Position numbers and translations under genes: made by a program. The notes below the pieces were generated by a model. The model saw nothing but the letters and a program-made list of their open reading frames with translations, was not told the DNA's origin and did no database searches. This document shows, in pieces, positions 13,365-57,434 of a stretch of DNA of 64,000 nucleotides. Where the stretch lies: positions 419,263 to 483,262 of the IMG/VR virus record IMGVR_UViG_3300027996_002186. One strand, given 5' to 3'. Position 1 is the first letter of the stretch. Each line of letters begins with the position of its first letter.

Positions 13365-13793
13365 ATGAAACACATTAAAAAGTTTAATGAAGAATTAGTA
13401 CCAAGATTTCCCACTCATAATAAGGGGGAGGTTATTGTTTATGCTAAGGATTTAGATTATAGAAATGTTCAAGTATTTGCTAAGAAGCTTGGTTATGAAG
13501 TAGTTGGTGAGGTTAGAGATGATGGTTATTTAGTGAAGACACCAGTTGGTCAAGAAGAACAAGCCGGTGCTGATTTTGTTGATAACTATCCAGAATTTTT
13601 CTATAACCACGAAAGAGAAGATATCAAAGATACTATGGCTTATGAAGAGTTAGATGATATCAAAAATGATGTTGAAAATTTAAGAGATTCTCTTGGTAGT
13701 CTAAATAAGTTTGGAAAAAGTATGTTACCTGATGGTTGGAATGAGGACATCGACAAAATTATTAATAGATTACAAAATGCCAAACACGAATAA
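13365..13793 (+). CDS. Hypothetical protein with N-terminal capsid-targeting-like motif
   Basis: Starts MKHIKKFNEE. Confidence 0.7.
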   Translation: MKHIKKFNEELVPRFPTHNKGEVIVYAKDLDYRNVQVFAKKLGYEVVGEVRDDGYLVKTPVGQEEQAGADFVDNYPEFFYNHEREDIKDTMAYEELDDIKNDVENLRDSLGSLNKFGKSMLPDGWNEDIDKIINRLQNAKHE

Positions 13794-14145
13794 ATACATA
13801 AAATCATTTATATTGTTTGAATCTGATAACATAAATTCGGATGAAATACCTTGGGAGGTCTTTTGGGAATTTATACAAGATTCTCAAGACGTTTTTATGG
13901 AAATAATGGATGATGATTTATTATTAAGTGATTATGGTAAATACTCTTTTGATTATCAAGATGATTTTATTTTCTTAAAGTTTAAAAAGCCAACAGATTT
14001 AGAAACAATTTCTTTTTTATGGGAAGATATTAAAATAGCAATTAATAGATTGAGTGATAAATATAATATTACTCATAAAGTATCCGATTTACCTGGTATA
14101 ATTAAGTTAGTTGTTACGTTGGAGAATCAATCCATTAAACCATAA
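13777..14145 (+). CDS. Paralogous-domain family protein (start revised from 13711)
   Basis: MPNTNKYIKSFILFES; DSQDVFMEIMDD...AINRL. Confidence 0.6.
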   Translation: MPNTNKYIKSFILFESDNINSDEIPWEVFWEFIQDSQDVFMEIMDDDLLLSDYGKYSFDYQDDFIFLKFKKPTDLETISFLWEDIKIAINRLSDKYNITHKVSDLPGIIKLVVTLENQSIKP

Positions 14146-14666
14146 ACATCATCAGCATTAAACTCTGGGTCGGTTATTTTCAAATCACAATCGATGAAAT
14201 TGTTAAAATCTATTTCATCCGAATCTAATCTACGTTTGATAGAATCATTCTTATCTTCTCTTGTATGTAATCTAGATTCTCTTATATTTCTATCAATATC
14301 TAAATAAACAACAAAACAACACTTTCTTTGTTCTTCTGTGATGTCTTTGAATTCACCAGGAGTCATTATCATAACTTGTGATGAGTTAAACTCATCTTTA
14401 GTTAATCCATAATACCACTTTTCTTTATCAGAATCTTCTGGTGTAACCTCAAATTCTTGGTGTGTTAGGAATTTATTTTCATTGATTGATTGTAAAAATT
14501 CAGAATCATCTACGAAGTTATAAGTAGAACCTTGTTCTTCAAATTTTCTTTTTGGTCTTGTTGTCCACTTTAGACAGGGTTTTAGACCTTTATCAGATAA
14601 TTTTCTTAATAGAAAGTCTTTCCCCGATCCACTAGGTCCCATTATTATACATTTTTCATTTTTCAT
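14127..14666 (-). CDS. gmk: Guanylate kinase-like protein
   Basis: GPSGSGKD, TTRPKR..E..G..YNF, WYYG, IKRRL. Confidence 0.85.
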   Translation of the reverse strand: MKNEKCIIMGPSGSGKDFLLRKLSDKGLKPCLKWTTRPKRKFEEQGSTYNFVDDSEFLQSINENKFLTHQEFEVTPEDSDKEKWYYGLTKDEFNSSQVMIMTPGEFKDITEEQRKCCFVVYLDIDRNIRESRLHTREDKNDSIKRRLDSDEIDFNNFIDCDLKITDPEFNADDVYGLMD

Positions 14667-14677
14667 TTCTAATTATA

Positions 14678-15487
14678 TTATCTTTTATCAATTTGTTCAT
14701 ATCTCCAATAGAATCCACGAGATTTCCTATTAATATTCTTACAACAAAATGAAATATTAGAAGAGTTACTACCTACATGATTTGCAGCTTCTTTGATAGA
14801 TTTAAATTCCCCAACTAGTTGATTATCATTATCATATTGATATACTTTCTTACCTATTTTTTCTTTCCTAGTCATATCCACTTTCACCAATTCACTACCG
14901 TCATCATATTTCCAAATGAACTTTCTGTGGTGCTTTCTTATACCGGTTAAACAAGCTGATATTTTACCTGTGCTAAAAAAACCATCACTTTCAACAACAG
15001 CGTCTTTAATACACTTATACTTCTTTATTATGTTATAGTTTATATCATATTGTATTATTGATTTATAACTATTGATATTAGGAATCCCAATTAATTTATT
15101 TTTAATTTTCTGCTTGGTTTCTTCACTACAAGGAACTCCTTTGTTATGTGGTGTATTTCCTTTCTTAAAGGATCCTTTATTACCAAAGGTAGATCCATCA
15201 CCACCTGATGTATAATTAACTAATGAAAATCCCCATGTTTTGAATAATGATATATAGAACATTTCCCAATATTGCCATTCAGATACCGGAACCTCATCTA
15301 TAATAATTAACTCAGGTCTAAATCCATCCTTTCTAACGTTGTTAATCCAATTTCTTTTATGTGTATTCTTATCCCTAGCAGAATTAAAGTGATTTGTGTA
15401 TCTATCTTTCGGATTGTTGGCTTTCCCAATATACCTAATTTGGTTATTTCTGGGATCAGATAGAGCATATATAAAAACATTTTTCAT
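14678..15487 (-). CDS. Free-standing GIY-YIG homing endonuclease with NUMOD3/NUMOD1-type repeats
   Basis: FIYAL...YIGKA..R...H, N.T.GGDG, HNKG...SEETKQKI, two QYD...F.SI.EA...W.Y repeats. Confidence 0.9.
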   Translation of the reverse strand: MKNVFIYALSDPRNNQIRYIGKANNPKDRYTNHFNSARDKNTHKRNWINNVRKDGFRPELIIIDEVPVSEWQYWEMFYISLFKTWGFSLVNYTSGGDGSTFGNKGSFKKGNTPHNKGVPCSEETKQKIKNKLIGIPNINSYKSIIQYDINYNIIKKYKCIKDAVVESDGFFSTGKISACLTGIRKHHRKFIWKYDDGSELVKVDMTRKEKIGKKVYQYDNDNQLVGEFKSIKEAANHVGSNSSNISFCCKNINRKSRGFYWRYEQIDKR

Positions 15488-15539
15488 TTCTTATATATAA
15501 AAACACCCAGTACCTCTTTTACCTAAAATTATAACATTT

Positions 15540-15923
15540 TTAATTTGGTATGAATTGAAGGCTTATTGATTGTAGGATCCATTCTGGGAATTCTTCAATC
15601 CTCTTGATATTTATAAATCTAGCACTGCCATTAGATAATACAATGTGTATATTTTTAATCTTACAATCCTCTGATATTATAATATCGTTAATTCGTTTAA
15701 GATATTCATTGACATCATTCAAACTAAATAAATACTTATCTGGATAAACTCCTATTTGGTTGGTTGATTTATCAATATCTATTGTTATTCTTTCTAATGA
15801 ATCGGATCTCTTTGTAACACTAGTTTTGAAATTTATATCATCTAATTCAAGTAATACATCTCTTATATTATTCATCAGAGAATCTTCGTCATTAAATGAC
15901 TCAAACATCTTTAGATAATTCAT
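15540..15923 (-). CDS. Paralogous-domain family protein
   Basis: MNYLKMFESF; NIRDVLLELDDINF...EYLKRI. Confidence 0.7.
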   Translation of the reverse strand: MNYLKMFESFNDEDSLMNNIRDVLLELDDINFKTSVTKRSDSLERITIDIDKSTNQIGVYPDKYLFSLNDVNEYLKRINDIIISEDCKIKNIHIVLSNGSARFINIKRIEEFPEWILQSISLQFIPN

Positions 15924-16186
15924 TATAATGGTTTATAATTTGGGATAGCTCCTTTGTAATTCTTATTACCACTCTTTAGTTGTTCTCTTTCTGCTTCAGA
16001 TGCAGCTCCATATTCTGGATCTTTCTTTTCTTTATCTTTACAATCCATACAGATTATATCTTCATTGAACATACTCATTGTGGTCATATTATTAGTTGAT
16101 TCACCACATCTATCACAATTATCTCTTCTCATGTCGAAGGAACCATGTCGTGCTGAATAATCTTCAAATGTTTTTAAGTTTTTCAT
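15923..16186 (-). CDS. Zn-finger protein with N-terminal capsid-targeting-like motif
   Basis: MKNLKTFE; CDRC...MSMFNEDIICMDC. Confidence 0.7.
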   Translation of the reverse strand: MKNLKTFEDYSARHGSFDMRRDNCDRCGESTNNMTTMSMFNEDIICMDCKDKEKKDPEYGAASEAEREQLKSGNKNYKGAIPNYKPL

Positions 16187-16542
16187 TCACCTAATTTAGT
16201 TTTTAATTCTTCTATGAATGGTTGAAAATTATGTTTACCATAATCATCTTTAAGTACTGTTGCAACAGCATCTGCGAAATCTTTATATGACATACTATCA
16301 TCAATTTGATTGATTGATTTACTTATATCACTTGATAATAAATCTGATTCATTTGATTCATTGAATCTTTTAAATTTTTTAATTTCATTCACATCATCAC
16401 TGACTGTTAATTTTTTAACAACCTTTAAGAGAAAATCTACATCTTCTATAGCAGCACTTGGATTATCATAGTAATAATCATCACCCCTTTCTTGTAAATG
16501 GGTAAATATATATTCTCTTTCCCAATCAGTTAGTTTATCCAT
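16183..16542 (-). CDS. Hypothetical protein with an internal copy of the targeting motif
   Basis: Internal IKKFKRFNESNES. Confidence 0.6.
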   Translation of the reverse strand: MDKLTDWEREYIFTHLQERGDDYYYDNPSAAIEDVDFLLKVVKKLTVSDDVNEIKKFKRFNESNESDLLSSDISKSINQIDDSMSYKDFADAVATVLKDDYGKHNFQPFIEELKTKLGE

Positions 16543-17089
16543 TATCTAAAACCTTTATTTTTAATGAATCTAACCATTGTTTAGCATCTTCTTCTGAATC
16601 AAAATATATCTCACCACCATCTACTGGATGGTTTTGAAATTCATAATGATATCCTTCTGTTCCAAAGGATTCTTTTGGTAAAGATATGTAGTGTGTTGGT
16701 TCACTAACTTCTGGTTCAATTTCTTTAATTATAGCCATCAATAATTGATAAACATCATCACCAGCATCTACATATTCGAAATCACTATCTCTTGAACTTT
16801 TAGAATATGATTCACCGTTTGGTAAGTCATAAGTAATAACTAGTTTATCATTATGTGGGTGGAAGGTATAATCAGTTCTAATAGAACTACCATCATCCAA
16901 CTCTATTTCATAATCCATCTCGGTCTCACCCGACACACCACTTATTTCAGTTACCTTTTTACCAGTGGCTCTTTCGACCTCACCAACAGTACCTTCAGTA
17001 TAATCAAGATAGTTTTCTTTATCATATTCACTATGTGGAACAACACCACTATAATCTATTGTTTCGTTGAATTTTTTTAAATGTTTCAT
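16535..17089 (-). CDS. Acidic hypothetical protein with N-terminal capsid-targeting-like motif
   Basis: Starts MKHLKKFNE. Confidence 0.7.
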   Translation of the reverse strand: MKHLKKFNETIDYSGVVPHSEYDKENYLDYTEGTVGEVERATGKKVTEISGVSGETEMDYEIELDDGSSIRTDYTFHPHNDKLVITYDLPNGESYSKSSRDSDFEYVDAGDDVYQLLMAIIKEIEPEVSEPTHYISLPKESFGTEGYHYEFQNHPVDGGEIYFDSEEDAKQWLDSLKIKVLDNG

Positions 17090-17607: not shown

Positions 17608-17618
17608 AAGATTATATA

Positions 17619-17930: not shown

Positions 17931-17965
17931 ATAATATTATATATAAATTAATATAATAAAAAGTT

Positions 17966-19446: not shown

Positions 19447-20082
19447 TCATAGTATGTTTACTTTAACATTTCTATCTGATAATAGATCTTGTAACTCTTC
19501 TCTTCTGAATATTTTCTTATAAACATCAGTTTCCGCATCAGCATTTTGTAATATCCATTCATTACCATTTGATGTTTCATAGATATAGTTCTCATCACCA
19601 TCGATTATTTCAATAACCTTTGATGTTAGTTTGTCATAAAATTTCTTAACATCATCATTTATCTTATAAAGTTTAACATCTTCCCATTTCTTTATAGTTT
19701 CATTCCAAACTTGAAATAATAAATAGATTGGGTTTTCCAACTCATTTGTATTTATATCAAAAATAAACATAAACTTACATGGTTTGTTCAAAAATGTTTG
19801 AAAATCCTCTGAGTTCTTTAATTCTGACTTTTTAAGAGCTATACTTGATAATGAATTGATAAACTCAACATTATCACTTAAAGTATCTAAATCTAATTTA
19901 TCAGCGAAATCATCATTAGGCAATTTGAATGTGTCATAGATATCTACCTCTTCCGCGGATATTGAGTTTAGTAGAGCATCGTGCCATAAACTTAAAGATT
20001 CAAGTAGTTCTTCTACATTTTGGAATGTTAAATCAACAACTACCGATTCTTTGTGTTGTTTATATTTCTTTAAGTATTTCAT
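19447..20082 (-). CDS. Hypothetical protein with N-terminal capsid-targeting-like motif (start revised from 20094)
   Basis: Second Met gives MKYLKKYKQHKES. Confidence 0.65.
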   Translation of the reverse strand: MKYLKKYKQHKESVVVDLTFQNVEELLESLSLWHDALLNSISAEEVDIYDTFKLPNDDFADKLDLDTLSDNVEFINSLSSIALKKSELKNSEDFQTFLNKPCKFMFIFDINTNELENPIYLLFQVWNETIKKWEDVKLYKINDDVKKFYDKLTSKVIEIIDGDENYIYETSNGNEWILQNADAETDVYKKIFRREELQDLLSDRNVKVNIL

Positions 20083-20083
20083 A

Positions 20084-20497
20084 TTAACCTTCACTTTCTT
20101 TTTTAGCTATGAACAATAGGTTTCTAACAACTTTAATAGAAGAAATAAAGTCATTATAAGTATCCTGACCGACTTGAGAATTCCAAATCAATTGCTGTCC
20201 ACCACCACTAACATACCTAACATATATATTATATCCTAATGATTCTAAATAATCATTCAATCTATTAAACTCATCAATGACATCATTTTTTATTTCTAAT
20301 GGATAATCCGTATATGTAACAATCCTTATTATTATCTCAGTAGGGTCTTTGGTAAAAGGTTCCCAATCAACCGTATTATCTTTAACACTTGGACTATATC
20401 CCATATCCGATATTGGTAATAAAATATCCTTTATTGTTTGTAACATGATATTTACTTTTTCAGATTCAAATATTTTATATGATTTTATGTAACGCAT
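20084..20497 (-). CDS. Paralogous-domain family protein
   Basis: MRYIKSYKIFES; TIKDILLPISDMGY...EFNRLNDYLESLG. Confidence 0.7.
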   Translation of the reverse strand: MRYIKSYKIFESEKVNIMLQTIKDILLPISDMGYSPSVKDNTVDWEPFTKDPTEIIIRIVTYTDYPLEIKNDVIDEFNRLNDYLESLGYNIYVRYVSGGGQQLIWNSQVGQDTYNDFISSIKVVRNLLFIAKKESEG

Positions 20498-20515: not shown

Positions 20516-20535
20516 TTTTTAATATATATTAAAAA
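20516..20535. promoter_or_regulatory. Palindromic double TAATATATA motif (putative divergent late promoters)
   Basis: TTTTTAATATATATTAAAAA is a perfect palindrome between divergent genes that both carry the N-terminal motif. Confidence 0.6.
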
Positions 20536-42802: not shown

Positions 42803-42884
42803 TTTTTATTATGTTTAATTTGTAGTTATGTACCTTATATATTAAAAATATACAATTGTTATATGAGGTTTTAATATATAAGTT

Positions 42885-45061: not shown

Positions 45062-45272
45062 TGGTATTAGATTACACAAAATAGGAGCCGAGAAGACTAG
45101 AGTATTTGAGGTTAACTTTGATGAAGTTTATGACCATTATAAACAAAAAGCAGAAGATGCTGGTTATTTTGGAGATCTTAAATTCATTAAAGAGAGGGGC
45201 AAAATAATAGTTTATTCTGTGATAGAGTTACCACCTGATGATGATGAATTAATCATCCGAGTTTCCTCTTAA
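45054..45272 (+). CDS. Hypothetical protein
   Basis: Coupled ORF. Confidence 0.55.
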   Translation: MSDGIRLHKIGAEKTRVFEVNFDEVYDHYKQKAEDAGYFGDLKFIKERGKIIVYSVIELPPDDDELIIRVSS

Positions 45273-45731
45273 ACGCTTAGTCATTTCCTCATAAGAGATT
45301 GGTATTCTCCAATAAAGTGATACATGAGAACATTCTTTATTTGAGTACCTTTCTAAATCATCTATTTTTATGAATTGACTATCATCATCTTTACGTTTAC
45401 CACCACCCACATGAACTTTAATAGCAAATATTGGTTGTATTATATATGAATATGTCTTTAAGAATTCATTTGATCTGTATATAACATCGAAAACATCACC
45501 AAATCTAAATGTTGGTACGGAAAAATCTTGTACGTGATCCTCATTAAAAATACCGTGTATTTCAACTCTTAAGCTATCACCAATAACTTCACCCCTTCTT
45601 TCAGAAGTTACAGTAGCCTCTAGATTTTGATCACGAGCATCGCATAATATATCATTAAGGTCATCAATTATAATTGACTCTTCCTCTTTGGTTATATCCT
45701 CAAATATTTTATATTTAATCAGGTACTTCAT
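45249..45731 (-). CDS. Paralogous-domain family protein
   Basis: MKYLIKYKIFED; DLNDILCDARDQNL...VIYRSNEFLK. Confidence 0.7.
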   Translation of the reverse strand: MKYLIKYKIFEDITKEEESIIIDDLNDILCDARDQNLEATVTSERRGEVIGDSLRVEIHGIFNEDHVQDFSVPTFRFGDVFDVIYRSNEFLKTYSYIIQPIFAIKVHVGGGKRKDDDSQFIKIDDLERYSNKECSHVSLYWRIPISYEEMTKRLRGNSDD

Positions 45732-46797
45732 TTATAAATTTCATACTTATTTCTTTTACGACTGGTCTAACATCAGTCTCTAAATCTGATTCCGATATAG
45801 ATATTTCAAAATCATCAAACTGCATTTCAGATTTAAATTTATATTCACCATCTTTCTTACCAACATATGAAAATTCTTCTTTCCACTCATTCATACCATT
45901 ATCAAGTACTTGAAATTCTATTGGGATTGATCCATTTGGATCAAAAGATGGGTTTCTTGCTTCTTCTCTCGATTTGTGTGAAGTGTTATTGTTTATTCCG
46001 TTAGGAAAATGTTTATCTAAAAAATCTAATAAACCCTTTATATTGAAATCATCTAAGCTTTTTAATTTCTCTGGATGAGGTGGGTAACTAAATGTCCCTC
46101 TTTTGTTATGTTGGCTAAACCTAATTGTAATGTTTTCAACATCATATTTAATTATATCCTTTATTTGGTTGATTCTATAATCGACATCATCTAATAGAAT
46201 AGTATTTTGTCCTCTTTTATAAAGAAGTACACCTATACCATATTTTGTAAATCCATTGGATGGCATACTTCTTTCCCTACTTGGGGTGACCATATAACCA
46301 TATCCCAAATCTTCCATATCATACAACATACTCTCAACATCACCACCGACATCATTATTATCTATATTTGTAATAGACTCATTTAGACTACAATCAGTTA
46401 CGTTTATATCAATATACCAAACTTCTGTCCCAATATAATCCAAAATATCTGAACTACTTAATTGGTACCATTCATTACCACTTAGATGTATCTCATATGT
46501 GCAAAAATTACAACCCTTTGACTTAACATATTGTGAAACTCTATATAAAGAATCAGATAGTTCTTTTGTTATTTCAAATTTCCCAGACATACTACCATCC
46601 TTGGTTGGTGTTATCTGAAAAAATATTCTATCAACCCCACGATTCGATCGTGTAATTTTCTTATTTATGAAAAGACCTAAATCCTCCACTTCTAATAAAA
46701 TATCTTTGATATCATCAAATAAATCCAAGAGGATTGCTTGAGGAAATTGAGGATATTTTGATTTCTCAAATAATTTATATGTTTCTAAATATTTCAT
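45715..46797 (-). CDS. Paralogous-domain family protein, two domain copies
   Basis: MKYLETYKLFE; DIKDILLEVEDLGL; SLNES linker; DVESMLYDMEDLGY. Confidence 0.7.
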   Translation of the reverse strand: MKYLETYKLFEKSKYPQFPQAILLDLFDDIKDILLEVEDLGLFINKKITRSNRGVDRIFFQITPTKDGSMSGKFEITKELSDSLYRVSQYVKSKGCNFCTYEIHLSGNEWYQLSSSDILDYIGTEVWYIDINVTDCSLNESITNIDNNDVGGDVESMLYDMEDLGYGYMVTPSRERSMPSNGFTKYGIGVLLYKRGQNTILLDDVDYRINQIKDIIKYDVENITIRFSQHNKRGTFSYPPHPEKLKSLDDFNIKGLLDFLDKHFPNGINNNTSHKSREEARNPSFDPNGSIPIEFQVLDNGMNEWKEEFSYVGKKDGEYKFKSEMQFDDFEISISESDLETDVRPVVKEISMKFINEVPD

Positions 46798-47774
46798 ATC
46801 TTAAATCTTAATCTAATATTGAAGCTGTGATAATGGCAATTCATTAACTCATCTATTGATTTCATATCTGCCCATTTATTTTGAAAGGATGCCGTTGCGA
46901 CCGAGATGAATAACTCATAACCAAGAGTTGTCATATAAGCATCTAGTCTTCTAACTACTTCACCGAACCATTCTGGTAAATCAAGTGATCCACTTCTATC
47001 AACCTCATCCCTCATATTAATTGTATCTATATTAATATAGAATGGTATGAAATAACCCTCTTTAATCTCATAATCAACATCATTATCAATAAACTCAATA
47101 CAAATATCATCAAGATCTCTTCTTAACTCAGATTTCTCGGTGTTCCGGAAGTTTTGATTTAAGTGGGTGTCCGAAAACAAATGTTGCTTCCGTTCGGTAA
47201 ATCTTACCAGACCAAACTGAGGTGATTCTACTTTACTCTCTGTGTAATATCCCGATGAAATTCTAATCGGAGGCCTTGTTTTTTTTGTTTTTATATCTAT
47301 TTGTGATATCTTAAAATAACCACTATCGAATTCAGAAATATTCTCTAGTTTTTCTAGATTTATATCTAAATCACACACACCCATTTCTGTATAATCAACG
47401 TTAAAAGCGGAGTTTTGATAAAATGCTCCAAACCTTAAATCACTATCTAAATATTCATCAAGTCTCATAATAATATCTATCAATTCTTCTGTTATTTTTA
47501 TATCACCAGAGTCACTCCCAGCACCAGAAGAAATATCATACTTATCATATATCTCAATCATCATATCATTATAAATACCTGATTTAGAATGCATTGAAGT
47601 TTGTTGATTGTAATCAACAAACAAATGACCTGTTAAAGATTCACCATCCATTGTTGATGATATTATACGATATTGTAGCCCTAAATCAATAAGATCCAAA
47701 CAGATATCATTGATATTATCCATTTCATCTGCACTTATCCCAACACTTTCATTAAAACTTTTTAAGTATTTCAT
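46794..47774 (-). CDS. Paralogous-domain family protein, two domain copies
   Basis: MKYLKSFNES; NINDICLDLIDLGL; YTES linker; DLDDICIEFIDND...RRLDAYMTTLG. Confidence 0.7.
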   Translation of the reverse strand: MKYLKSFNESVGISADEMDNINDICLDLIDLGLQYRIISSTMDGESLTGHLFVDYNQQTSMHSKSGIYNDMMIEIYDKYDISSGAGSDSGDIKITEELIDIIMRLDEYLDSDLRFGAFYQNSAFNVDYTEMGVCDLDINLEKLENISEFDSGYFKISQIDIKTKKTRPPIRISSGYYTESKVESPQFGLVRFTERKQHLFSDTHLNQNFRNTEKSELRRDLDDICIEFIDNDVDYEIKEGYFIPFYINIDTINMRDEVDRSGSLDLPEWFGEVVRRLDAYMTTLGYELFISVATASFQNKWADMKSIDELMNCHYHSFNIRLRFKI

Positions 47775-47811
47775 ATATAAATCTATATATTAATATGGTA
47801 AACCCATTACA

Positions 47812-48570: not shown

Positions 48571-50601
48571 ATGAAAATGTATAAATACCCAGAATTTAAA
48601 TACCCAAACTTAGAAACATATATATCAGAACTTGAGAGTATATTAAATAAGTCAGAATTAGTAATAAATGAATTGTTAAAAATTGATAATAAAACATATG
48701 ATACTTTCCTAAAGCCATATTTCATGGCTTATGAAGATATAAACAATCATTACTTTTATCTATCACACATAAATTCAGTTAAGAATACTGATGATACACA
48801 ACGTGTTGAAACTGAGAGCTTACCAATTATGAGTGATTGGTACACAAAGATAGGTCAACGAGATGACATTCATCAAGCATTATTGGAGGTTTCGAAAACA
48901 AATCTTAACCCAAGTCAGCGCATAGTAATCGAACAATCATTGCTTAGTAACAAACTAAAGGGTATTGGTCAAGAAGATTCAATTAAGAAAAGGCTTGGTG
49001 AAATTAGCAAAGAGTTATCTGAGTTATCTGATTCATTTTCTACAAACCTACTAAAAGCTACAAAGGATTTCAAACTAGAAGTAAAAAATCCAGAAGATGT
49101 TAGTGAGTTCCCTGATGATGAATTACAAAGACATGTAAAAGAGGATACTGATCATTGGGAATTTACCTTACAAGCACCATCATACTCAGCTTACTTAAAG
49201 TATGGATCTAACACAGATATAAGAGAGAAATTATCCAAAGCATTATCAACAAGAGCTACTGAAAATGAAGAACTTATTGAAAAAATATTAACTCTTAAAA
49301 ACGAAAAGGCTAAAATATTAGGATATAAAAATTACGCTGAGATATCGATATTAACAAAAATGGCTGATAGTCCAAATGAAATAGTTGGGTTTTTGGATAG
49401 GTTAGCAACAATCGCCTTACCTATTAAGTCAAAAGAAGATGATGAATTATTATCATTCACTGAAAGAAAGTATGGCGTAACACATTTAAACTCTTGGGAT
49501 AAAGGTTATTACACAAATAAATATAAGGAAAGTGTTTATGATTTTAAGTCAGAAGATTTGAAACCATATTTTGAACAATCAATGGTGTTAAATGGTTTAT
49601 TTGACTTTCTGTATGAAAAATTCAAGCTTAAATTTACTAAAGTAGATACTTATGTTTGGGATGAAAAGGTTACTGTGTATGATATAACACGTAATGGTGA
49701 AGAACATTCAAGAGTTTATATCGATCTAGAATCTAGAGATGATAAAAGATCCGGTGCTTGGATGAATAATTCAGAAGTTGGTTATGTAAAGGAAAATGGT
49801 GAAAAGGTTTTACCAATTGCTTATATAACTTGCAATTTCACACCATCAACTGATAAGTTACCATCATTACTTTCACACTATGAAGTAGAAACACTATTTC
49901 ATGAGATGGGACATGTATTACAACACGTCTGTTCAGAAGTGGAAGATTTCACATACGCTGGTATAGGTGGTATCGAGTGGGATGCTGTTGAGTGGAGTTC
50001 TCAATTTTTAGAACTATTTGTTTATGAAGGAGATGTATTAAGGAAATTTGGTAAACACCATGAAACTGGTGAAATAATACCGGATGAGTTCATTAAAAAG
50101 ATTAACGATTTAAGAACATACAGAGCAGCTAATGGAATCATAGGACAAGTGAAGAATGGTAAATTCGATATGACAATTTTCCAATCAGATGATACGTCAA
50201 AGGAATATGTACAATCAACACTTGATAAGATAATAGAAGATTTTGGATTGGAATCTTTTGATGGTAATAAATGGCAATGTGGGTTTAGTCATATTTTTGC
50301 TGGTGGATACTCAGCAGGGTATTACTCTTATAAATGGTCAGAAGTTCTTTCAGTTGATACTTTCTTAAAATTTAGAGAAAATGATGATAGTGATAAGTAT
50401 TATGAAGAATTTTTGAGTAAGGGCTCATCTCTGCCAAGTATGGATATGTTTGTTAATTATATGGGTAGAAAGCCTAGTGAAGAATCATTAGTAAACTACC
50501 TAATCGGATTACAACCTGTTTCGTCAGGTCGAGAGTTTGAATCCCTTCAAGCGAAGTTTGATTCAAAAAGAATTAATAATGAACTTAGAGGGTTGGGGTA
50601 A
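48571..50601 (+). CDS. prlC: M3A metallopeptidase, oligopeptidase A (OpdA/PrlC)-like
   Basis: KRSGAWM, TLFHEMGH, WDAVE.SSQFLE, FSHIFAGGYSAGYYSYKWSEV. Confidence 0.93.
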   Translation: MKMYKYPEFKYPNLETYISELESILNKSELVINELLKIDNKTYDTFLKPYFMAYEDINNHYFYLSHINSVKNTDDTQRVETESLPIMSDWYTKIGQRDDIHQALLEVSKTNLNPSQRIVIEQSLLSNKLKGIGQEDSIKKRLGEISKELSELSDSFSTNLLKATKDFKLEVKNPEDVSEFPDDELQRHVKEDTDHWEFTLQAPSYSAYLKYGSNTDIREKLSKALSTRATENEELIEKILTLKNEKAKILGYKNYAEISILTKMADSPNEIVGFLDRLATIALPIKSKEDDELLSFTERKYGVTHLNSWDKGYYTNKYKESVYDFKSEDLKPYFEQSMVLNGLFDFLYEKFKLKFTKVDTYVWDEKVTVYDITRNGEEHSRVYIDLESRDDKRSGAWMNNSEVGYVKENGEKVLPIAYITCNFTPSTDKLPSLLSHYEVETLFHEMGHVLQHVCSEVEDFTYAGIGGIEWDAVEWSSQFLELFVYEGDVLRKFGKHHETGEIIPDEFIKKINDLRTYRAANGIIGQVKNGKFDMTIFQSDDTSKEYVQSTLDKIIEDFGLESFDGNKWQCGFSHIFAGGYSAGYYSYKWSEVLSVDTFLKFRENDDSDKYYEEFLSKGSSLPSMDMFVNYMGRKPSEESLVNYLIGLQPVSSGREFESLQAKFDSKRINNELRGLG

Positions 50602-50643: not shown

Positions 50644-51396
50644 ATGATAACAGATAAATACGTATTTTTTTGGGGTGGAATCTGCAGCCAATGGGCCGCA
50701 TCTGAATTTGAAATTGATGGACAAAAATATACTTGTGCAGAACAGTATATGATGTATAAGAAAGCTTCTTTATTTGAAGATGAAGATGTAGAAAATGCTA
50801 TAATGAGAACCAATAACCCCAGAGAGCAAAAAGCTTTAGGAAGAAAAGTTAGAGGTTTTGACAAAGATAAGTGGGAAGAAGTTTGTAAAGAATATGTTTA
50901 TGAAGCTAACTATGCTAAGTTCACACAAAACTCATTCATGCTTGAAGAGTTAAAAACTTATGGTGATAGAGAAATTGTAGAAGCATCACCAGAAGACTCT
51001 ATTTGGGGGATTGGAATGCATGAGACTGACCCTGATATCCTTGACAAGACCAAGTGGAGGGGAACAAACTGGCTTGGAGAAGCAATAATGCGAGTTAGAG
51101 ATGAATTATTAACTGAAAATGTAAAGACTTTAAATTTAATATACAGACATACAGGCGATGGTAAGTTCGTTGCTGAAATGGAAGACGGTTCTTTTAAGGA
51201 CTTGGGCCCTAATGCTGTCGGGATGATTAGGTATACTTATTTTGAAGAAGATACACTACCATCAAATGGATGGGAAGTTACAAGAGGTAAGCTATTAGAA
51301 GATTACCAACCAAAGATGTTAAAAGATTATCAGGATGGTAAGTTTGAAGTTTCTCACATAGATGAACATGGGATGAAACACTTTAAAGAAAAATGA
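50644..51396 (+). CDS. NADAR (YbiA-like) protein with C-terminal extension
   Basis: SQW, AEQYMM..KA..F.D, KALGRKV, KFTQN, VEASP.D.IWGIG, W.G.N.LG...M.VR. Confidence 0.9.
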   Translation: MITDKYVFFWGGICSQWAASEFEIDGQKYTCAEQYMMYKKASLFEDEDVENAIMRTNNPREQKALGRKVRGFDKDKWEEVCKEYVYEANYAKFTQNSFMLEELKTYGDREIVEASPEDSIWGIGMHETDPDILDKTKWRGTNWLGEAIMRVRDELLTENVKTLNLIYRHTGDGKFVAEMEDGSFKDLGPNAVGMIRYTYFEEDTLPSNGWEVTRGKLLEDYQPKMLKDYQDGKFEVSHIDEHGMKHFKEK

Positions 51397-52107: not shown

Positions 52108-52224
52108 AAGTACTTTCCACTTGTCACATCTTCAAAAATATATTCCCAAAATTTACTGCAATGGATAGAAAGAAAAAGATACGCAAAATATTTAACTTAC
52201 CAGAAGAAAAATTACCATTTTAAG

Positions 52225-52824: not shown

Positions 52825-52925
52825 GTTTGTGTGCAAAACCACGGAAAATTTTATAAAAGAGGTAATAATTATTAAATATATAATTAAAATATAAAGATGA
52901 GTAAAAAGGAAGAAGGTGGTTTATT

Positions 52926-54251
52926 ATGAGATATTTTTTAACATTGGTAATATTATTATTTTCATTAACAAATGTCAATTCACAAGTAGCTAATGATGAT
53001 TGTCTTAACGCAATACCATTAGGTAATCTACCAAACCCATCTAATTGTGGTCCAGGACCTATGAATAATGGACAAGGTTCTCCAATCACATTTAATAATC
53101 TTACAAATGTAAACTCATTAACAGAGGCTCCATATACTACACTAATAAATTGCCAAGGAACTCCAGGAAATAATATGTCTTCTCCAGCTACCGATGTTTG
53201 GTATTCATTCGTTGCAACAGGAAATTCATTAGATGTTACAATTAATGGAAATATAAACCAACCGAATGTAGGTATATGGACAGGAAATTGTGGAGCATTA
53301 ATAGGGGTCGGTTGTGATATTGGTGGAGGAGGAAACTTAAATACTACATCTCAATTAACACCCGGACAAACATATTACATTCAAATCAGTGGAGGAAACC
53401 CTGCAGATCAAGGAACATTCGATTTAACACTACAAAATAATAATAGTTGTGATGATTGTTTATTATCATCTAATATGACCGTCACTCCATTACCAATAAA
53501 TGGAACCTATCAACCAGGAACTACTGTAACATTTTGTTTTACAGTAACAGAATGGTCACAAGAAAATCAAAATTGGTTTCATGGTGTTGTTCCTATAATG
53601 GCATCTGGTTGGGGTCCTATCACACCAATAAGTGGAGCAAATACTTGTGACACTGGTCCAGGGGTTTGGACTTGGTTTAATGGTATCAACACACCAAACG
53701 GAAATTCAAATGGGTTTTTCTTTGATGGTGATTTGTTTAACAATCCAAATGGAAATCCTACAAACAATTTCGGAGATAATTGTAATGGTAATGTCAATTG
53801 GGAATTTTGTTGGGAAGCAACAACAACTAGTTGTCCACCTGGTCAAGATGGAGATAACCTAAGTGTTTTTATAGAAACTTACGCTGATGGTGAAACTGGT
53901 AGCTGGACGAATATAGCTTGTCAAAATGATCCTATATTTGCATTCAGTGGTAGTCTTACGTGCTGTCCGATACCAACTGAAATACACACAGATGAAATAT
54001 GTTTAGGTGAAAATGATGGAACAATAACAGTAACAGGACAAGGTAGTGCACCATTCGATTATGTTTGGGAAGACTCTAATGGAAATATAATACAAACATC
54101 AAATAATATAAATGGTTCGGATAATATGTTAAATCTTGCACCAGATATATATACTATCACCGTCACAGATAATGATGGATGTGTACAAACAATAACAATA
54201 ACTATATTAGCAGGAGGCCAAGCCAGTATAGTGGGTATATGGCATAATTAA
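52926..54251 (+). CDS. Secreted Cys/Asn/Gly-rich adhesin-like protein with a SprB-like repeat
   Basis: Signal peptide ending NS|Q; NDDC..A, DVWYSF.A; C...NDG.I....G..PF.Y.W...Y..TVTD..GC; ends IVGIWHN. Confidence 0.8.
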   Translation: MRYFLTLVILLFSLTNVNSQVANDDCLNAIPLGNLPNPSNCGPGPMNNGQGSPITFNNLTNVNSLTEAPYTTLINCQGTPGNNMSSPATDVWYSFVATGNSLDVTINGNINQPNVGIWTGNCGALIGVGCDIGGGGNLNTTSQLTPGQTYYIQISGGNPADQGTFDLTLQNNNSCDDCLLSSNMTVTPLPINGTYQPGTTVTFCFTVTEWSQENQNWFHGVVPIMASGWGPITPISGANTCDTGPGVWTWFNGINTPNGNSNGFFFDGDLFNNPNGNPTNNFGDNCNGNVNWEFCWEATTTSCPPGQDGDNLSVFIETYADGETGSWTNIACQNDPIFAFSGSLTCCPIPTEIHTDEICLGENDGTITVTGQGSAPFDYVWEDSNGNIIQTSNNINGSDNMLNLAPDIYTITVTDNDGCVQTITITILAGGQASIVGIWHN

Positions 54252-54274
54252 AAATAAAAAAAAACAATGAAAAA

Positions 54275-55425: not shown

Positions 55426-55432
55426 TTCAACA

Positions 55433-55918
55433 TCAGATATCCAAGGGAATAAAATAGATGTATAATTTTTTTACTCTATCTGGTAAATCATCAAAGTTTT
55501 CGAAATAACAATTATTACCAAATCTATCTGTATTATTCAAAGCGGGTGTTGTTATGAAATAGCAATCCAATCTATGAGTATCAGATACCATATCTATTGA
55601 TGTTATTATTGTTTCTTTTATATCTGATAAATTAAATCCCCTCTCACTTCTTCTAAGGTCAAACGGTTCATGTCTTGGACTTCCGGGCTTAATTTCGATT
55701 ACTATTTGTATCAAATTAACAGCATGTTCACTAATAAAGTATTCCTGAATATCATCAGAGTGTATCATTTTCTTACCTTTGAATGATATTGGTATATCAG
55801 TAACATTATTAATATCTACATGATAACCATCATCTTCTAAATCAAGAAACCTATCTGAAATATCTTCTATTAAACTTTCTTGTACTTTATATAATTTATA
55901 TGATTTTAAATAATCCAC
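55433..55918 (-). CDS. Paralogous-domain family protein (GTG start proposed)
   Basis: (M)DYLKSYKLYKVQES; DISDRFLDLEDDGY; TAATATATA at 55923-55931(-). Confidence 0.6.
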   Translation of the reverse strand: MDYLKSYKLYKVQESLIEDISDRFLDLEDDGYHVDINNVTDIPISFKGKKMIHSDDIQEYFISEHAVNLIQIVIEIKPGSPRHEPFDLRRSERGFNLSDIKETIITSIDMVSDTHRLDCYFITTPALNNTDRFGNNCYFENFDDLPDRVKKLYIYFIPLDI

Positions 55919-55928
55919 TACATATATA

Positions 55929-56279
55929 TTAATAATCAGATTTGTTAATATTATTTTTAATATACATAGCATCTAAGATAACATCACTTAAAACTAATAC
56001 AAATCCTGGATTTTCACCTTTTATATTTGCATATTCAACTGCTAATAAATTAGGTCTGTGATCTAAACTGATGATATAATCACCATCATCATGTTCAGTA
56101 ACTATATCATAGTATTTAGTTAACATACTAATACTATCTCCCCTTTCTAGAATAATACATTCTTTATTAAAAATATACTTAGCTATTATCATATTCCCAA
56201 CTTTTTTAATTTTTGGTCTCTTAATACCTTCTAGTGAAAACTGGCCTCCATATCTTTGGGTAATTAATAAAATCCCCAT
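55929..56279 (-). CDS. Hypothetical protein
   Basis: ORF track. Confidence 0.5.
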   Translation of the reverse strand: MGILLITQRYGGQFSLEGIKRPKIKKVGNMIIAKYIFNKECIILERGDSISMLTKYYDIVTEHDDGDYIISLDHRPNLLAVEYANIKGENPGFVLVLSDVILDAMYIKNNINKSDY

Positions 56280-56439
56280 TTATATTTGATTCAAAATAAC
56301 CAACCTTTTCACGACAACCTGGATACTCTATTAATAATTTGAAACCCCTTATATCTTCAATACTATACATCTATATATTTACTATTCTTATGCCTCGTTA
56401 GTTTAACACTTTTTACTATGTTAAAGTGATTTAATGAAA

Positions 56440-56889
56440 TTAATCCTTTATACCCAATTCTTTTAATTTTGATTCTCTAATCAATCTCTTTGTTTCTGGA
56501 TAATTATCATATATATAATCCACCATTGTGTGTATTTCGTTAATAACATAATCTTTATCTCTATAAGTACCAGTCATTTCAAATGGAGACCGCGTGGATA
56601 AATATTCATCTAGTATATAATAAGGAGAAAAGTCATTAGAATGAGCAGTATCAAATCCTATTTTCAATTCATTATCAACCACCTCACAATAAGTAACACT
56701 ACCATGACAAGGTATAGACTCTGCTTCATCATTATCGAAAAGTGGATGCCAGTTTGGTATGAAAATATATCCACACCAATTTTTCATCTGATTCCTTATC
56801 ATCTCACATTTGATATGTAAATATTCAAATTTGAGATTATCTCCTTCTTTATCTAAAATATCTAATATTTCCTCTTTATTCATATTCAC
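56440..56889 (-). CDS. Conserved phage-type protein (WCGY/HG/GFD.AH) with C-terminal tag
   Basis: WCGYIFIP..HP, CHGSVTY, IGFDTAH..D; ends IRESKLKELGIKD. Confidence 0.7.
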   Translation of the reverse strand: MNMNKEEILDILDKEGDNLKFEYLHIKCEMIRNQMKNWCGYIFIPNWHPLFDNDEAESIPCHGSVTYCEVVDNELKIGFDTAHSNDFSPYYILDEYLSTRSPFEMTGTYRDKDYVINEIHTMVDYIYDNYPETKRLIRESKLKELGIKD

Positions 56890-57434
56890 TAGTTTATTAT
56901 TTTAAAAAATTCTAATCGAGTAATATATACACGACCCTTGCGTTTATTTATAATCCTTTTCAAGGATAAAAACCATTTTTTACTAGACCAAATGGATTCA
57001 CGAACATTTCTTATATTGTTATGATGTGAACTACATTTATCATAAGTCTTTATTACTTTAGTGGTATAACCATTACCACACATAAATAAAGTTATTCTTT
57101 CAACAACCTCATCTAAAAAGTCCTCATTCATAAATTTATAATCATTATCAAATACCCTTTGTGTAGATATATTCGATTTGTATTGAAATTCTATATAAAG
57201 TCTTGATCCTGTCCATCGCTCAGCTTTAGAATCTTCTGGAATTAGTGGCGTATGAAAAATATGAGCATTTATACCATCATCAGTAACTTCTAAACAAATA
57301 TCTTTTAAGTCGTTTTTTAAATTATGAAATTTTGCATAATCATCCACGACAATCTTTACTGCATTGTTCCTCCAAATTGTTGGGTAATGTCTACCATTTC
57401 TATTAAACATCGGCTTAGATTCTAATGATTTCAT
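56889..57434 (-). CDS. Paralogous-domain family protein lacking the N-terminal motif
   Basis: DLKDICLEVTDDGI...EVVERITLFMCGNGY. Confidence 0.6.
   Translation of the reverse strand: MKSLESKPMFNRNGRHYPTIWRNNAVKIVVDDYAKFHNLKNDLKDICLEVTDDGINAHIFHTPLIPEDSKAERWTGSRLYIEFQYKSNISTQRVFDNDYKFMNEDFLDEVVERITLFMCGNGYTTKVIKTYDKCSSHHNNIRNVRESIWSSKKWFLSLKRIINKRKGRVYITRLEFFKIIN

What the first reader, a model, noticed from the sequence alone, without database searches (positions are those of the whole stretch)
13777..57434. Dispersed, highly diverged paralogous domain (10 copies in 8 genes)
Seen: a ~110-aa unit beginning with (D/N)(I/L)xD(I/V)(L/C)x(E/D)(L/I/V)xDxG and with a later helix like E(V/I)xxR(L/I)xx(Y/F)(L/M)xxxG, in ORFs 13777, 15540-, 20084-, 45249-, 45715- (x2), 46794- (x2), 55433- and 56889-. 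Seven of eight genes carry the capsid-targeting-like N-terminus. Inference: an expanded family with a conserved scaffold and variable surfaces, as expected for a diversified set of injected inhibitors or nucleic-acid-binding internal proteins.
Basis: partly seen in the sequence, partly recalled or inferred. Interest (0 to 1): 0.7.

Follow-up and report, generated by a model that had tools for sequence, protein, structure and literature searches.

The report
Tagged protein family in marine jumbo phage
A 312-kb marine jumbo phage and its megaphage relatives carry dozens of copies of an undescribed small acidic protein domain, almost always behind the same 10-12-residue N-terminal tag, which may be an address label for loading proteins into the phage head.

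Summary
Nine of the ten proposed domain copies, in seven of eight genes, are significant. This was shown with leave-one-out profiles and with an external profile from which the leader and all BLAST-detectable relatives were removed (E 1e-6 to 1e-18; best shuffled decoys 0.017-0.18). ORF 13777 is marginal (HMMER E 0.8; HHalign probability 90%).

The window lies in a 312,709-bp marine jumbo phage. That genome has 23 six-frame matches. Two uncultured megaphages, LR756502.1 and LR745206.1, have 51 and 36. A profile finds 337 representative clusters among 1.84 billion proteins, with one, two or three domains each.

There is no Pfam, PHROGs, PADLOC or PDB match. The AlphaFold model (pLDDT 76) is a generic two-layer alpha/beta sandwich with no convincing structural relative.

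The N-terminal tag, MK(Y/H)LK..(Y/F)..FE-S or MKYLKxFNE-S, is not specific to this family. At least 45 ORFs of the genome carry it, and 33 of them lack the domain. It is conserved as a peptide, not as DNA.

Function is unproven. The best guess (about 0.4) is a cleavable head-targeting propeptide on ejected proteins, as in T4 and SPN3US. Against this, the proteins are acidic and no T4-, HK97- or ClpP-type protease was found. A conserved M16 peptidase is a weak lead.

The parts
46794..47774 (-). Two-domain family gene (326 aa), first gene of a three-gene operon. The leader MKYLKSFNES is at 47739-47774. Domain 1 is 47436-47729 and domain 2 is 46812-47129.
   Evidence: External leader-trimmed profile E 1.3e-18, with domains at 1.2e-8 and 4.4e-10. 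Leave-one-out E 1.4e-7.
45715..46797 (-). Two-domain family gene (360 aa) with a C-terminal region of about 100 aa of unknown fold. The leader MKYLETYKLFEK is at 46762-46797. Domain 1 is 46402-46725 and domain 2 is 46114-46353.
   Evidence: External profile E 1.6e-14, with domain 1 at 4.6e-12 and domain 2 at 0.0067. Leave-one-out E 5.7e-9. A full-length orthologue with 44% identity lies in megaphage LR745206.1.
45249..45731 (-). Single-domain family gene (160 aa). The leader MKYLIKYKIFED is at 45696-45731 and the domain is 45297-45674. Its start overlaps the end of 45715.
   Evidence: External profile E 8e-10. Leave-one-out E 0.0036. Its orthologue in LR745206.1 is adjacent to the 45715 orthologue in the same order.
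20084..20497 (-). Single-domain family gene (137 aa). The leader MRYIKSYKIFES is at 20462-20497 and the domain is 20126-20446. This is the member that was modelled.
   Evidence: External profile E 8e-14. More than 100 orthologues in metagenomes. AlphaFold model with pLDDT 76.4 and pTM 0.73.
15540..15923 (-). Single-domain family gene (127 aa). The leader MNYLKMFESF is at 15888-15923 and the domain is 15552-15884.
   Evidence: External profile E 2e-12. phmmer against 20084 gives 2e-7.
55433..55918 (-). Single-domain family gene with a large insert between the two halves of the domain. The true start is most likely the GTG at 55918 (161 aa; the leader reads DYLKSYKLYK after the start codon), not the ATG at 55972. 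The domain is 55451-55879.
   Evidence: External profile E 1.2e-6 with no close homologue in the profile. Homologues P0001 and P0005 begin MDYLKSYKLYK. The promoter-like motif ends 4 nt before the GTG.
56889..57434 (-). Single-domain family gene (181 aa). It is the only basic member (pI 9.1) and the only one without the leader. The domain is 56973-57323.
   Evidence: External profile E 2e-11. Leave-one-out E 1.6e-5. pI.
13777..14145 (+). Doubtful tenth copy (122 aa). A leader-like KYIKSFILFES is displaced by five residues.
   Evidence: HMMER E 0.8 with the external profile, and not found by leave-one-out. HHalign probability 90.5%, E 1.3e-6, with the leader included.
47784..47793 (-). Promoter-like motif TTAATATATA, 9 nt upstream of the 46794 start codon. 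It heads the 46794-45715-45249 operon.
   Evidence: 13 copies in the window against 2.8 expected. Genome-wide, 74 of 97 TAATATATA sites are followed by an ORF within 60 nt.
55923..55932 (-). Promoter-like motif TTAATATATA, 4 nt upstream of the GTG start of 55433.
20523..20532 (-). Promoter-like motif TTAATATATA, 25 nt upstream of the 20084 start. It overlaps a divergent copy at 20519-20528 (+) that serves ORF 20553.

Best explanation
Shown:
- The genes encode a lineage-specific, undescribed domain of about 110-130 residues. It is a two-layer alpha/beta sandwich with the order helix-strand-strand-helix-strand-(helix)-strand.
- The conserved core motifs are an xxIxDILLELxDxG(F/Y) helix and an ExxxRxxDYLxSxGY helix. 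The loops vary greatly.
- The domain occurs once, twice or three times per protein and in tens of copies per genome, in a clade of low-GC marine and freshwater jumbo and megaphages.
- Nearly every member starts with a peptide tag of 10-12 residues: M-K-(Y/H)-L-K-x-(Y/F)-x-x-F-E-S, or the shorter M-K-Y-L-K-x-F-N-E-S.
- About one ORF in ten in this genome carries the tag, on many unrelated proteins of unknown function.

Inferred:
- The tag is an address or propeptide that brings these proteins into the assembling head and is cut off after its terminal Glu (...FE|S or ...NE|S). This is how T4 loads its internal proteins through the capsid targeting sequence, and how phiKZ/SPN3US-type giant phages process their inner-head paralogue families.
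- The domain family would then be one large class of head-internal proteins ejected with the DNA. The conserved core would serve as scaffold, and the variable loops as binding surfaces for host targets. Because the proteins are acidic, those targets are more likely proteins than DNA.
For: Family reality and spread.

Fold. The leader residues 1-10 have pLDDT below 50, so they are not part of the folded core.

The tag appears once per protein, at the N-terminus only, and never before second domains.

Tag frequency:
- 128 of 145 external representatives have it.
- At least 45 own-genome ORFs have it, and 33 of them lack the domain. Those 33 fall into about 30 BLAST-unrelated groups.
- The strict DNA pattern gives 23, 69 and 59 hits in the three related genomes, against 3, 3 and 1 for the reversed control.

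Synonymous codons inside the tag vary about as in the rest of the genome, so selection acts on the peptide.

The tag ends in Glu in 122 of 128 cases. Ser is at P1' in 69 of those 122, and L or I is at P3 in 64.

The linker from the tag to the domain varies from 3 to 39 residues.

None of the tagged window or genome proteins I scanned has a Pfam domain (9 window and 8 other genome proteins). None of the proteins with recognisable enzymatic or tail domains carries the tag.

Precedents from the literature:
- The T4 capsid targeting sequence MKTYQEFIAE is cleaved once, and any protein fused to it is packaged (PMC8442874).
- T4 internal proteins are a diverse set that share only this sequence (PMC3012670).
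- T4, phiKZ and SPN3US proteases all cut after Glu. SPN3US has a 20-member head paralogue family and short N-terminal propeptides ending in x-x-E (PMC5694885).
Against: There is no experimental or proteomic evidence that any member is in virions.

No T4 gp21-type (PF03420), HK97-type (PF04586) or ClpP-type (PF00574) protease is detectable in the 91%-complete genome. No T4-like capsid gene was found either: the Gp23 hits fall in ORFs of 67-68 aa and are spurious.

The proteins are acidic, whereas T4 internal proteins are basic.

The tag only resembles the T4 sequence. It is not homologous to it.

At least 45 different cargo proteins is a large number, although SPN3US heads contain about 50 protein species (PMC7411985 abstract).

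The family genes sit in an arm of small ORFs that looks like an early or host-takeover region. 15 of 21 members lie in the first 80 kb.
Confidence: 0.4

Rival explanations
1. The family members are cytoplasmic early or host-takeover proteins, such as binders or inhibitors of host factors or defence systems, and are never packaged. The tag serves another peptide-level purpose. Candidates are recognition by the phage's own DnaK/DnaJ chaperones, a translational ramp that boosts early elongation on near-leaderless mRNAs, or control of stability.
For: - Members cluster in an arm of small unknown ORFs: 15 of 21 lie in the first 80 kb. The same is seen in LR756502.1, at 13-82 kb.
- The proteins are small, acidic and variable at the loops.
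- The phage encodes DnaK-like and DnaJ-like proteins, judged from their N-terminal sequences.
- Many tagged genes sit 4-6 nt behind the promoter-like motif, so their mRNAs would be nearly leaderless.
- No prohead protease was found.
Against: - A translational ramp would not explain conservation out to residues 10-12, or the conserved terminal Glu-Ser.
- Tagged genes also occur with 20-26-nt spacers and in translationally coupled positions.
- There is no match to any defence or anti-defence model.
- The chaperone and ramp ideas were not tested.
Confidence: 0.3
2. The tag is a presequence for the phage's own M16-family metallopeptidase, the same family as the mitochondrial processing peptidase. 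The peptidase removes the tag, and in this phage the M3 oligopeptidase degrades the released peptide. Processing would activate or sort the proteins, whether or not capsids are involved.
For: - There is a 369-aa M16 peptidase with an HLMEH motif (Pfam M16 4.9e-9, M16_C 1.2e-9).
- It is single-copy and of conserved length (372-374 codons of open frame) in all three tag-rich genomes.
- An M3 oligopeptidase lies in the window at 48571-50601 (E 1e-105), about 800 bp from the 46794 operon.
- Complex prediction of the M16 dimer with residues 1-60 of ORF 20084 gave a verdict of weak support. The median score was 0.40 and the best control 0.00. That mark was reached by 51 of 78 solved complexes and 2 of 108 mismatched pairs, but passes at 0.60 or below are more often wrong than right. 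The runs agreed in at least 21% of their contacts, and the partner's pLDDT was at least 31.
- From general knowledge, M16B enzymes cut N-terminal presequences and M3 enzymes degrade short released peptides.
Against: - The co-occurrence rests on three related genomes, which is not independent evidence.
- The M3 gene is absent from the two megaphages.
- The M16 gene sits among metabolic-looking and methylase-like genes, not head genes.
- The complex result is weak by the tool's own calibration, and the job differs from that calibration.
Confidence: 0.2
3. The shared N-terminus has no function of its own. It is either the remnant of a promoter-plus-start cassette that spreads by recombination, as the early promoter cassettes of T4-type phages do, or a by-product of AT-rich codon bias.
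For: - The genome is 29% G+C, and the tag uses K, Y, L, F, N and E, all AT-rich codons.
- A promoter-like motif often directly precedes tagged genes.
- Short DNA matches link the 5' ends of different genes at 87-91% over about 32 nt.
Against: - Synonymous codons vary within the tag while the residues stay fixed.
- The same residue order is kept in 128 of 145 representatives from many environments.
- The reversed-pattern control is 8- to 59-fold lower.
- Tagged genes also occur without the promoter motif.
Confidence: 0.07
4. The ten segments are not homologous, and the resemblance is chance similarity of amphipathic helices in an AT-rich genome.
For: - Pairwise searches find only one pair.
- Mean column identity is 11-22%.
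Against: - Leave-one-out and independent external profiles recover nine of ten copies far above the shuffled decoys.
- 337 external clusters are found.
- ESM Atlas neighbours of different members overlap.
Confidence: 0.02

Closest known systems
[quoted passage not shown]
   Same: A short conserved N-terminal peptide begins M-K, has an aromatic residue in the middle and ends in Glu. It sits on otherwise dissimilar, fast-evolving small proteins. In T4 it directs packaging into the head and is cut off once (PMC8442874, PMC3012670).
   Different: - The tag sequence differs and is not demonstrably homologous.
- At least 45 proteins are tagged here, against three in T4.
- The proteins here are acidic, not basic.
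- No gp21-type protease or gp23-type capsid gene was detected.
- Packaging is untested.
Head paralogue families of giant phages: SPN3US families A and B, and the phiKZ inner-body proteins (pfam12699)
   Same: These are large paralogue families of unknown function in a giant phage, and the number of members varies between relatives (2 to 20). In family A, short N-terminal propeptides of 12-15 residues end at x-x-Glu (PMC5694885).
   Different: - No sequence similarity, and no Pfam hit.
- Those families were shown to be in virions by mass spectrometry, and this one was not.
- No S80/S77-type protease was found here with PF03420.
Circularly permuted ferredoxin-like domains of PilO, PilN, GspL and GspM (PulM, EpsM, XcpY)
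   Same: The model has the same order of elements (helix-strand-strand, twice) in a two-layer sandwich. These domains are among the best structural hits: VIA Z 5.9 for PilO, 5.0 for PulL, 4.8 for PulM and 4.7 for EpsM, and Foldseek E 0.08 for PulM.
   Different: - The scores are within the range the tool gives for unrelated common folds (best Z 6.3, and that hit is a designed protein).
- No sequence similarity.
- The phage proteins show no membrane anchor.
- There is an extra helix before the last strand.
Organellar presequences processed by M16 (MPP) and M3 peptidases
   Same: A short basic and hydrophobic N-terminal tag occurs on many unrelated proteins, in a genome that encodes an M16 peptidase and, here, an M3 oligopeptidase.
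   Different: - This is only an analogy.
- The tag is much shorter and more uniform than presequences.
- No compartment is known.
- The predicted interaction has only weak support.

Membership tests
T4-type capsid-targeted internal proteins | A conserved N-terminal peptide of about 10 residues shared by otherwise dissimilar small proteins | tested here: met
   128 of 145 external representatives have it. At least 45 own ORFs have it, in about 30 unrelated groups. The sequence differs from MKTYQEFIAE, so this is an analogy, not homology.
T4-type capsid-targeted internal proteins | The tag ends at a site for the prohead protease (cut after Glu; L or I at P3 in T4, from general knowledge) | tested here: inconclusive
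   Glu is at positions 8-12 in 122 of 128 cases. P3 is L or I in 64 and F or Y in 37. P1' is Ser in 69. Cleavage itself cannot be tested here.
T4-type capsid-targeted internal proteins | The genome encodes a gp21-type prohead protease (Peptidase_S77) | tested here: not met
   PF03420 has no match at E<=1 in the six-frame search of the genome. PF04586 and PF00574 are also absent. The genome is 91% complete, and a divergent enzyme could be missed.
T4-type capsid-targeted internal proteins | The proteins are basic and DNA-associated | tested here: not met
   pI is 4.05-5.3 for 8 of the 9 confirmed window domains, and the median pI of 145 representatives is 5.1.
T4-type capsid-targeted internal proteins | The proteins are present in the mature head and ejected into the host | not testable with these tools
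   This needs virion proteomics. There is no cultured relative: only uncultured megaphages match in the phage collection.
Giant-phage head paralogue families (SPN3US A/B, phiKZ inner body) | Sequence membership (pfam12699 or PSI-BLAST links) | tested here: not met
   No Pfam or PHROGs hit for any member.
Giant-phage head paralogue families (SPN3US A/B, phiKZ inner body) | Many paralogues per genome, with numbers that vary between related phages | tested here: met
   23, 51 and 36 six-frame matches in the three genomes (23 at E<=0.01; 51 and 36 at E<=0.001).
Giant-phage head paralogue families (SPN3US A/B, phiKZ inner body) | Detected in purified heads by mass spectrometry | not testable with these tools
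   No isolate or proteome is available.
Permuted ferredoxin-like PilO/GspM-type domain | Helix-strand-strand repeated twice in a two-layer sandwich | tested here: met
   The model has H6-31, E37-40, E54-60, H71-86, E89-97, (H114-120) and E123-133. This rests on one model with pLDDT 76.
Permuted ferredoxin-like PilO/GspM-type domain | A structural match clearly above background | tested here: inconclusive
   VIA Z is 4.7-5.9 for PilO, PulL, PulM and EpsM, the best overall Z is 6.3, and Foldseek E is 0.05 or higher. The tool states that Z under 8 may reflect only a common arrangement.
Any curated protein family or solved structure | A significant profile or sequence match | tested here: not met
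   - Pfam.
- PHROGs.
- PADLOC.
- PDB sequences: best E 0.028.
- BFVD and AlphaFold DB: best E about 0.02 with TM below 0.5.
- Only unnamed viral clusters match in the ESM Atlas, at TM 0.85, 0.68 and 0.66.
Presequence plus M16 processing peptidase system | An M16 peptidase with an HxxEH motif is encoded and co-occurs with the tag | tested here: met
   Pfam M16 and M16_C hits and an HLMEH motif. There is one copy in each of the three tag-rich genomes. The three genomes are related, so the co-occurrence is weak evidence.
Presequence plus M16 processing peptidase system | The peptidase binds and cuts the tag | tested here: inconclusive
   Complex prediction gave weak support. The score was 0.40 and the best control 0.00. 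The mark was reached by 51 of 78 solved complexes and 2 of 108 mismatches, and passes at 0.60 or below are more often wrong than right. Run agreement was at least 21% and partner pLDDT at least 31.

The most novel reading that the evidence does not exclude
A clade of marine and freshwater jumbo and megaphages uses one short N-terminal address tag (MK(Y/H)LK..(Y/F)..FE|S) on 10% or more of its proteome. All tagged proteins are of unknown function. The tag is read and removed by a conserved phage M16 peptidase. This would be a virus-encoded, presequence-like sorting system that defines the whole set of proteins loaded into the head and delivered to the host. The domain family studied here would be its largest cargo class.
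Probability: 0.2. Interest if true: 0.85.

Novelty: new variant of a known kind. Interest (0 to 1): 0.6.

Why it matters
Megaphages and marine jumbo phages are uncultured, and most of their genes have no known function.

The domain profile and the tag together label roughly a tenth of the ORFs in three such genomes, and several hundred protein clusters in metagenomes, as one functional class. That makes a concrete question testable: are these the proteins the phage carries in its head and delivers to the host?

If the tag is an address label, two things follow:
- The ejected proteome of uncultured phages could be predicted from sequence alone.
- The tag could be used to load foreign proteins into such capsids, as the T4 capsid targeting sequence is used.

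If the tag is not an address label, it is still an unusually uniform peptide signal whose reader is unknown.

Tried and rejected
- Curated libraries gave nothing for the eight proteins: Pfam, PHROGs, PADLOC.
- The PDB sequence profile search gave nothing.
- Foldseek against PDB, BFVD and AlphaFold DB, and VIA-align against 48,161 chains, gave only generic alpha/beta sandwiches.
- The Atlas hit to a 555-aa viral cluster with 2H/Acb1 and RNase_T domains (TM 0.55) was not pursued as homology. The longer family members I scanned showed no such fusions.
- The first structure job used a single sequence and was poor (pLDDT 52).
- The search for related loci with the 150-sequence alignment failed because no stretch was conserved enough.
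- The T4 gp21, HK97 S78 and ClpP protease families are absent.
- The three Gp23 matches fall in ORFs of 67-68 aa, or across a stop codon, and were rejected as spurious.
- Stop-codon recoding was checked and rejected. Table 11 gives about 90% coding coverage along most of the genome (0.63 in the first 20 kb).
- A literature search for the tag strings found nothing. The papers that mention LR756502 do not describe the family.
- No RNA run holds the region, so expression timing could not be read.
- Strain variation gives 15 synonymous against 24 non-synonymous changes. This shows relaxed constraint in the C-terminal part of 45715, but the sample is too small to claim diversifying selection.

Full report
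**Context**

- The window is bases 8837-72836 (minus strand) of a 312,709-bp IMG/VR virus record estimated 91% complete. G+C is about 29%.
- The standard bacterial code gives about 90% coding coverage along most of the genome (0.63 in the first 20 kb), and no stop codon looks reassigned.
- It is a tailed phage. It has a tail-fibre protein, a UvsX-like recombinase and a protein matching PhoH-like and terminase-large-subunit PHROGs.
- The operon at 45249-47800 occurs nearly identically in 20 marine, seawater or brine metagenome runs from many studies.
- In the phage collection its genes match only two uncultured megaphages, LR745206.1 (635 kb) and LR756502.1 (642 kb). Examples are 44% identity over all of ORF 45715 and 47% over the 555-aa ORF at 38480. 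These are the freshwater and subsurface megaphages discussed in PMC9723777.

Pairwise phmmer links only 15540 and 20084, so the claim needed profiles.

- An iterative search seeded with 20084 minus its first 14 residues recruited 15540, both halves of 45715 and 46794, 56889 and 55433. It placed 45249 just above the inclusion threshold (E about 0.004). It also found several genes outside the window. None of the 5x shuffled decoys appeared.
- Iterated E-values are inflated, so I ran two stricter tests.
- Leave-one-out profiles of the paralogues gave 5.7e-9 to 1.6e-5 for five of the window genes, 0.0036 for 45249, 0.021 for 55433 and nothing for 13777. The best decoys were 0.013-0.22.
- The second test used a profile of 150 mostly external sequences (A2). 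Its leader columns were removed, and so was every row that BLAST-matches the tested protein. It gave 1.2e-6 to 1.3e-18 for seven genes, including 45249 (8e-10) and 55433 (1.2e-6). It gave 0.8 for 13777. The best decoys were 0.017-0.18.
- The second domain of 45715 is the weakest confirmed copy (domain E 0.0067).
- HHalign places 13777 on the profile with 90.5% probability, but part of that alignment is the leader.

Verdict: nine copies in seven genes are confirmed, and 13777 is undecided.

**How large is the family?**

- A six-frame search of the whole genome finds 23 matches at E<=0.01, 18 of them below 1e-5. 15 of 21 lie in the first 80 kb.
- LR756502.1 has 51 matches, concentrated at 13-82 kb. 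LR745206.1 has 36.
- A profile of the paralogues finds 337 representative clusters at E<=0.001 among 1.84 billion proteins. Of the best 145, 65 have one domain, 70 have two and 10 have three.
- ORF 20084 alone has over a hundred orthologues at about 40-86% identity.
- In LR745206.1 the orthologues of 45715 and 45249 are adjacent in the same order.
- The paralogues are therefore old and individually conserved. They are not recent duplicates.

**What is the domain?**

- No curated family or solved structure matches by sequence.
- With the 150-sequence alignment, AlphaFold2 gives pLDDT 76.4 and pTM 0.73 for ORF 20084. The elements are helix 6-31, strands 37-40 and 54-60, helix 71-86, strand 89-97, helix 114-120 and strand 123-133.
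- Conserved positions are D24, I25, D31 and R79. Inserts of very different length sit between the strands.
- Structure searches return only generic two-layer sandwiches. These include permuted ferredoxin-like PilO/PulM/EpsM domains and a circular permutant of ribosomal protein S6. The scores (VIA Z at most 6.3, Foldseek E 0.02 or higher) are what the tools describe as background.
- The ESM Atlas returns unnamed clusters of tailed-phage proteins at TM 0.85, 0.68 and 0.66. Different window members share some of these neighbour clusters. This is modest support for one fold.
- The domains are acidic, with pI 4.05-5.3 except 56889.

**The N-terminal tag**

This is the more surprising result.

- 128 of 145 external representatives begin M-(K/R)-(Y/H)-(L/I)-K-x-(Y/F), followed by ..F-E-S or N-E-S.
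- In the phage itself a position matrix built from those sequences picks out at least 45 ORFs.
- With the tag trimmed, only 12 of those 45 contain the domain. The other 33 fall into about 30 groups with no BLAST similarity to each other.
- Tagged window genes without the domain are 13365(+), 15923(-), 16535(-), 19447(-), 38480(+) and 42885(+). Looser variants occur on 20553(+) and 36804(+).
- A strict DNA pattern for M-K-(Y/H)-(L/I/V/M/F)-K occurs 23, 69 and 59 times in the three related genomes, against 3, 3 and 1 for the reversed control.
- Inside the tag, synonymous codons vary about as elsewhere in the genome. For example, Tyr3 is TAT in 15 and TAC in 9, and Leu4 uses five different codons. 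The peptide is under selection, not the DNA.
- The tag occurs once per protein and never before a second domain.
- It has low model confidence.
- A linker of 3-39 residues separates it from the domain.
- It ends in Glu in 122 of 128 cases, followed by Ser in 69 of those 122.
- None of the tagged window or genome proteins I scanned has a Pfam domain (9 window and 8 other genome proteins).
- None of the proteins with recognisable functions carries the tag.

**What does it do?**

Nothing here is shown, so I weigh the analogies.

- In T4 a 10-residue capsid targeting sequence, MKTYQEFIAE, loads the internal proteins, or any protein fused to it, into the prohead and is cut off once (PMC8442874). 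The internal proteins are otherwise a diverse anti-restriction set (PMC3012670).
- T4, phiKZ and SPN3US head proteases all cut after Glu. SPN3US has a 20-member head paralogue family and 12-15-residue N-terminal propeptides (PMC5694885).
- The tag, its terminal Glu, the paralogue expansion and the restriction to proteins of unknown function all fit that picture. I rank it first at about 0.4.
- Against it: the proteins are acidic. No S77, S78 or ClpP protease was found. The apparent Gp23 hits are spurious. The genes lie in what looks like an early arm of the genome.
- The main rival, at about 0.3, is a set of unpackaged host-takeover binders whose tag is read by something else.

**A further lead: the M16 peptidase**

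- The phage encodes an M16-family peptidase with an HLMEH motif. One copy is conserved in both megaphages.
- There is also an M3 oligopeptidase in the window at 48571-50601, which the megaphages lack.
- From general knowledge, M16 enzymes remove N-terminal presequences and M3 enzymes degrade short released peptides.
- A complex prediction of the M16 dimer with residues 1-60 of ORF 20084 gave a verdict of weak support. The median score was 0.40 and the best control 0.00. That mark was reached by 51 of 78 solved complexes and 2 of 108 mismatched pairs, but passes at 0.60 or below are more often wrong than right. The runs agreed in at least 21% of their contacts, and the partner's pLDDT was at least 31.
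- I treat this as a lead only.

**Population variation**

- One brine-metagenome strain differs at 39 listed positions in 45715 and 46794: 15 synonymous and 24 non-synonymous. One of the changes, read singly, would give a stop codon, but it is adjacent to a second change in the same codon.
- The non-synonymous changes concentrate in residues 255-335 of 45715, outside the two domains.
- This indicates relaxed purifying selection. It is no clear sign of an arms race.

**Comparison and novelty**

- The family belongs to no known family.
- In kind it resembles the tagged internal proteins of T4 and the head paralogue families of phiKZ-like phages, so I class it as a new variant of a known kind.
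- What is new is the domain itself, its spread through uncultured marine and freshwater giant phages, and above all the uniform tag on about a tenth of the ORFs.
- My searches of the held literature found no description of either. That search is limited to the open library.

Noticed in passing
window 9711-61748 (13 sites), e.g. 47784-47793(-), 55923-55932(-), 42871-42880(+), 20519-20532 (both strands): The promoter-like motif TTAATATATA occurs 13 times in the window against 2.8 expected. Genome-wide, 74 of 97 TAATATATA sites are followed by an ORF within 60 nt. Two spacings are preferred, 4-6 nt and 20-26 nt. The short spacing suggests leaderless or nearly leaderless mRNAs.
   Followed up: partly
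window 13365-13793(+), 15923-16186(-), 16535-17089(-), 19447-20082(-), 38480-40147(+), 42885-43436(+); looser variants at 20553-21929(+) and 36804-38483(+): Further genes carry the same N-terminal tag but lack the domain. None has a Pfam hit. ORFs 36804 and 38480 are tandem genes of 559 and 555 aa; 38480 has a 47%-identical orthologue in LR745206.1.
   Followed up: partly
window 48571-50601(+): A Peptidase_M3 (thimet/oligopeptidase A type) gene of 676 aa, Pfam E 1.2e-105, lies about 800 bp from the 46794 operon. It is absent from the two megaphage relatives.
   Followed up: partly
genome G000:C1:237451-238560 (outside the window; locus L017:1451-2560): An M16-family peptidase of 369 aa with an HLMEH motif. 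It is single-copy and of conserved length in LR756502.1 and LR745206.1. It is a candidate reader of the tag, and the complex prediction gave only weak support.
   Followed up: partly
window 50644-51396(+): A NADAR-domain protein (Pfam E 1.7e-49). From general knowledge, this is a family of ADP-ribose-processing enzymes, so a counter-defence role is possible.
   Followed up: no
window 55916-55972(-): The annotated ATG start of ORF 55433 is probably wrong. The GTG at 55918 lies 4 nt behind the promoter-like motif and gives the tag. Homologues elsewhere start at that position with ATG.
   Followed up: yes
window 42885-43436(+); genome 93575-96008 (three tandem genes) and 6733-7203: A second tagged paralogue family shares a motif of the type TYxxAAxKLxxxGHxxRA just after the tag. 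An orthologue lies in LR745206.1 (33% identity, E 2e-12).
   Followed up: partly
window 52926-54251(+) and 41339-42802(-): Two proteins have N-terminal signal-like hydrophobic segments ending in SQ. One has a near-threshold SprB-repeat hit (27.6 bits against a cut-off of 28). This hints at a Bacteroidota host, but the host was not tested.
   Followed up: no
window 21958-26634(+): A 1558-aa ORF has no Pfam or PHROGs match. It is followed by an AAA ATPase at 27152-28222.
   Followed up: no
window 46103-46110 in run X14: A strain variant of ORF 45715 carries a +1 insertion and a -1 deletion 7 nt apart. This is a compensated frameshift that changes two or three residues between the two domains.
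   Followed up: no
genome 148050-149339(+) and 149378-150493(+) (outside the window): Two further long family members lie side by side. The first has a GTG start and a full tag (open frame of 429 aa). The second lacks the tag and begins directly with the domain.
   Followed up: partly
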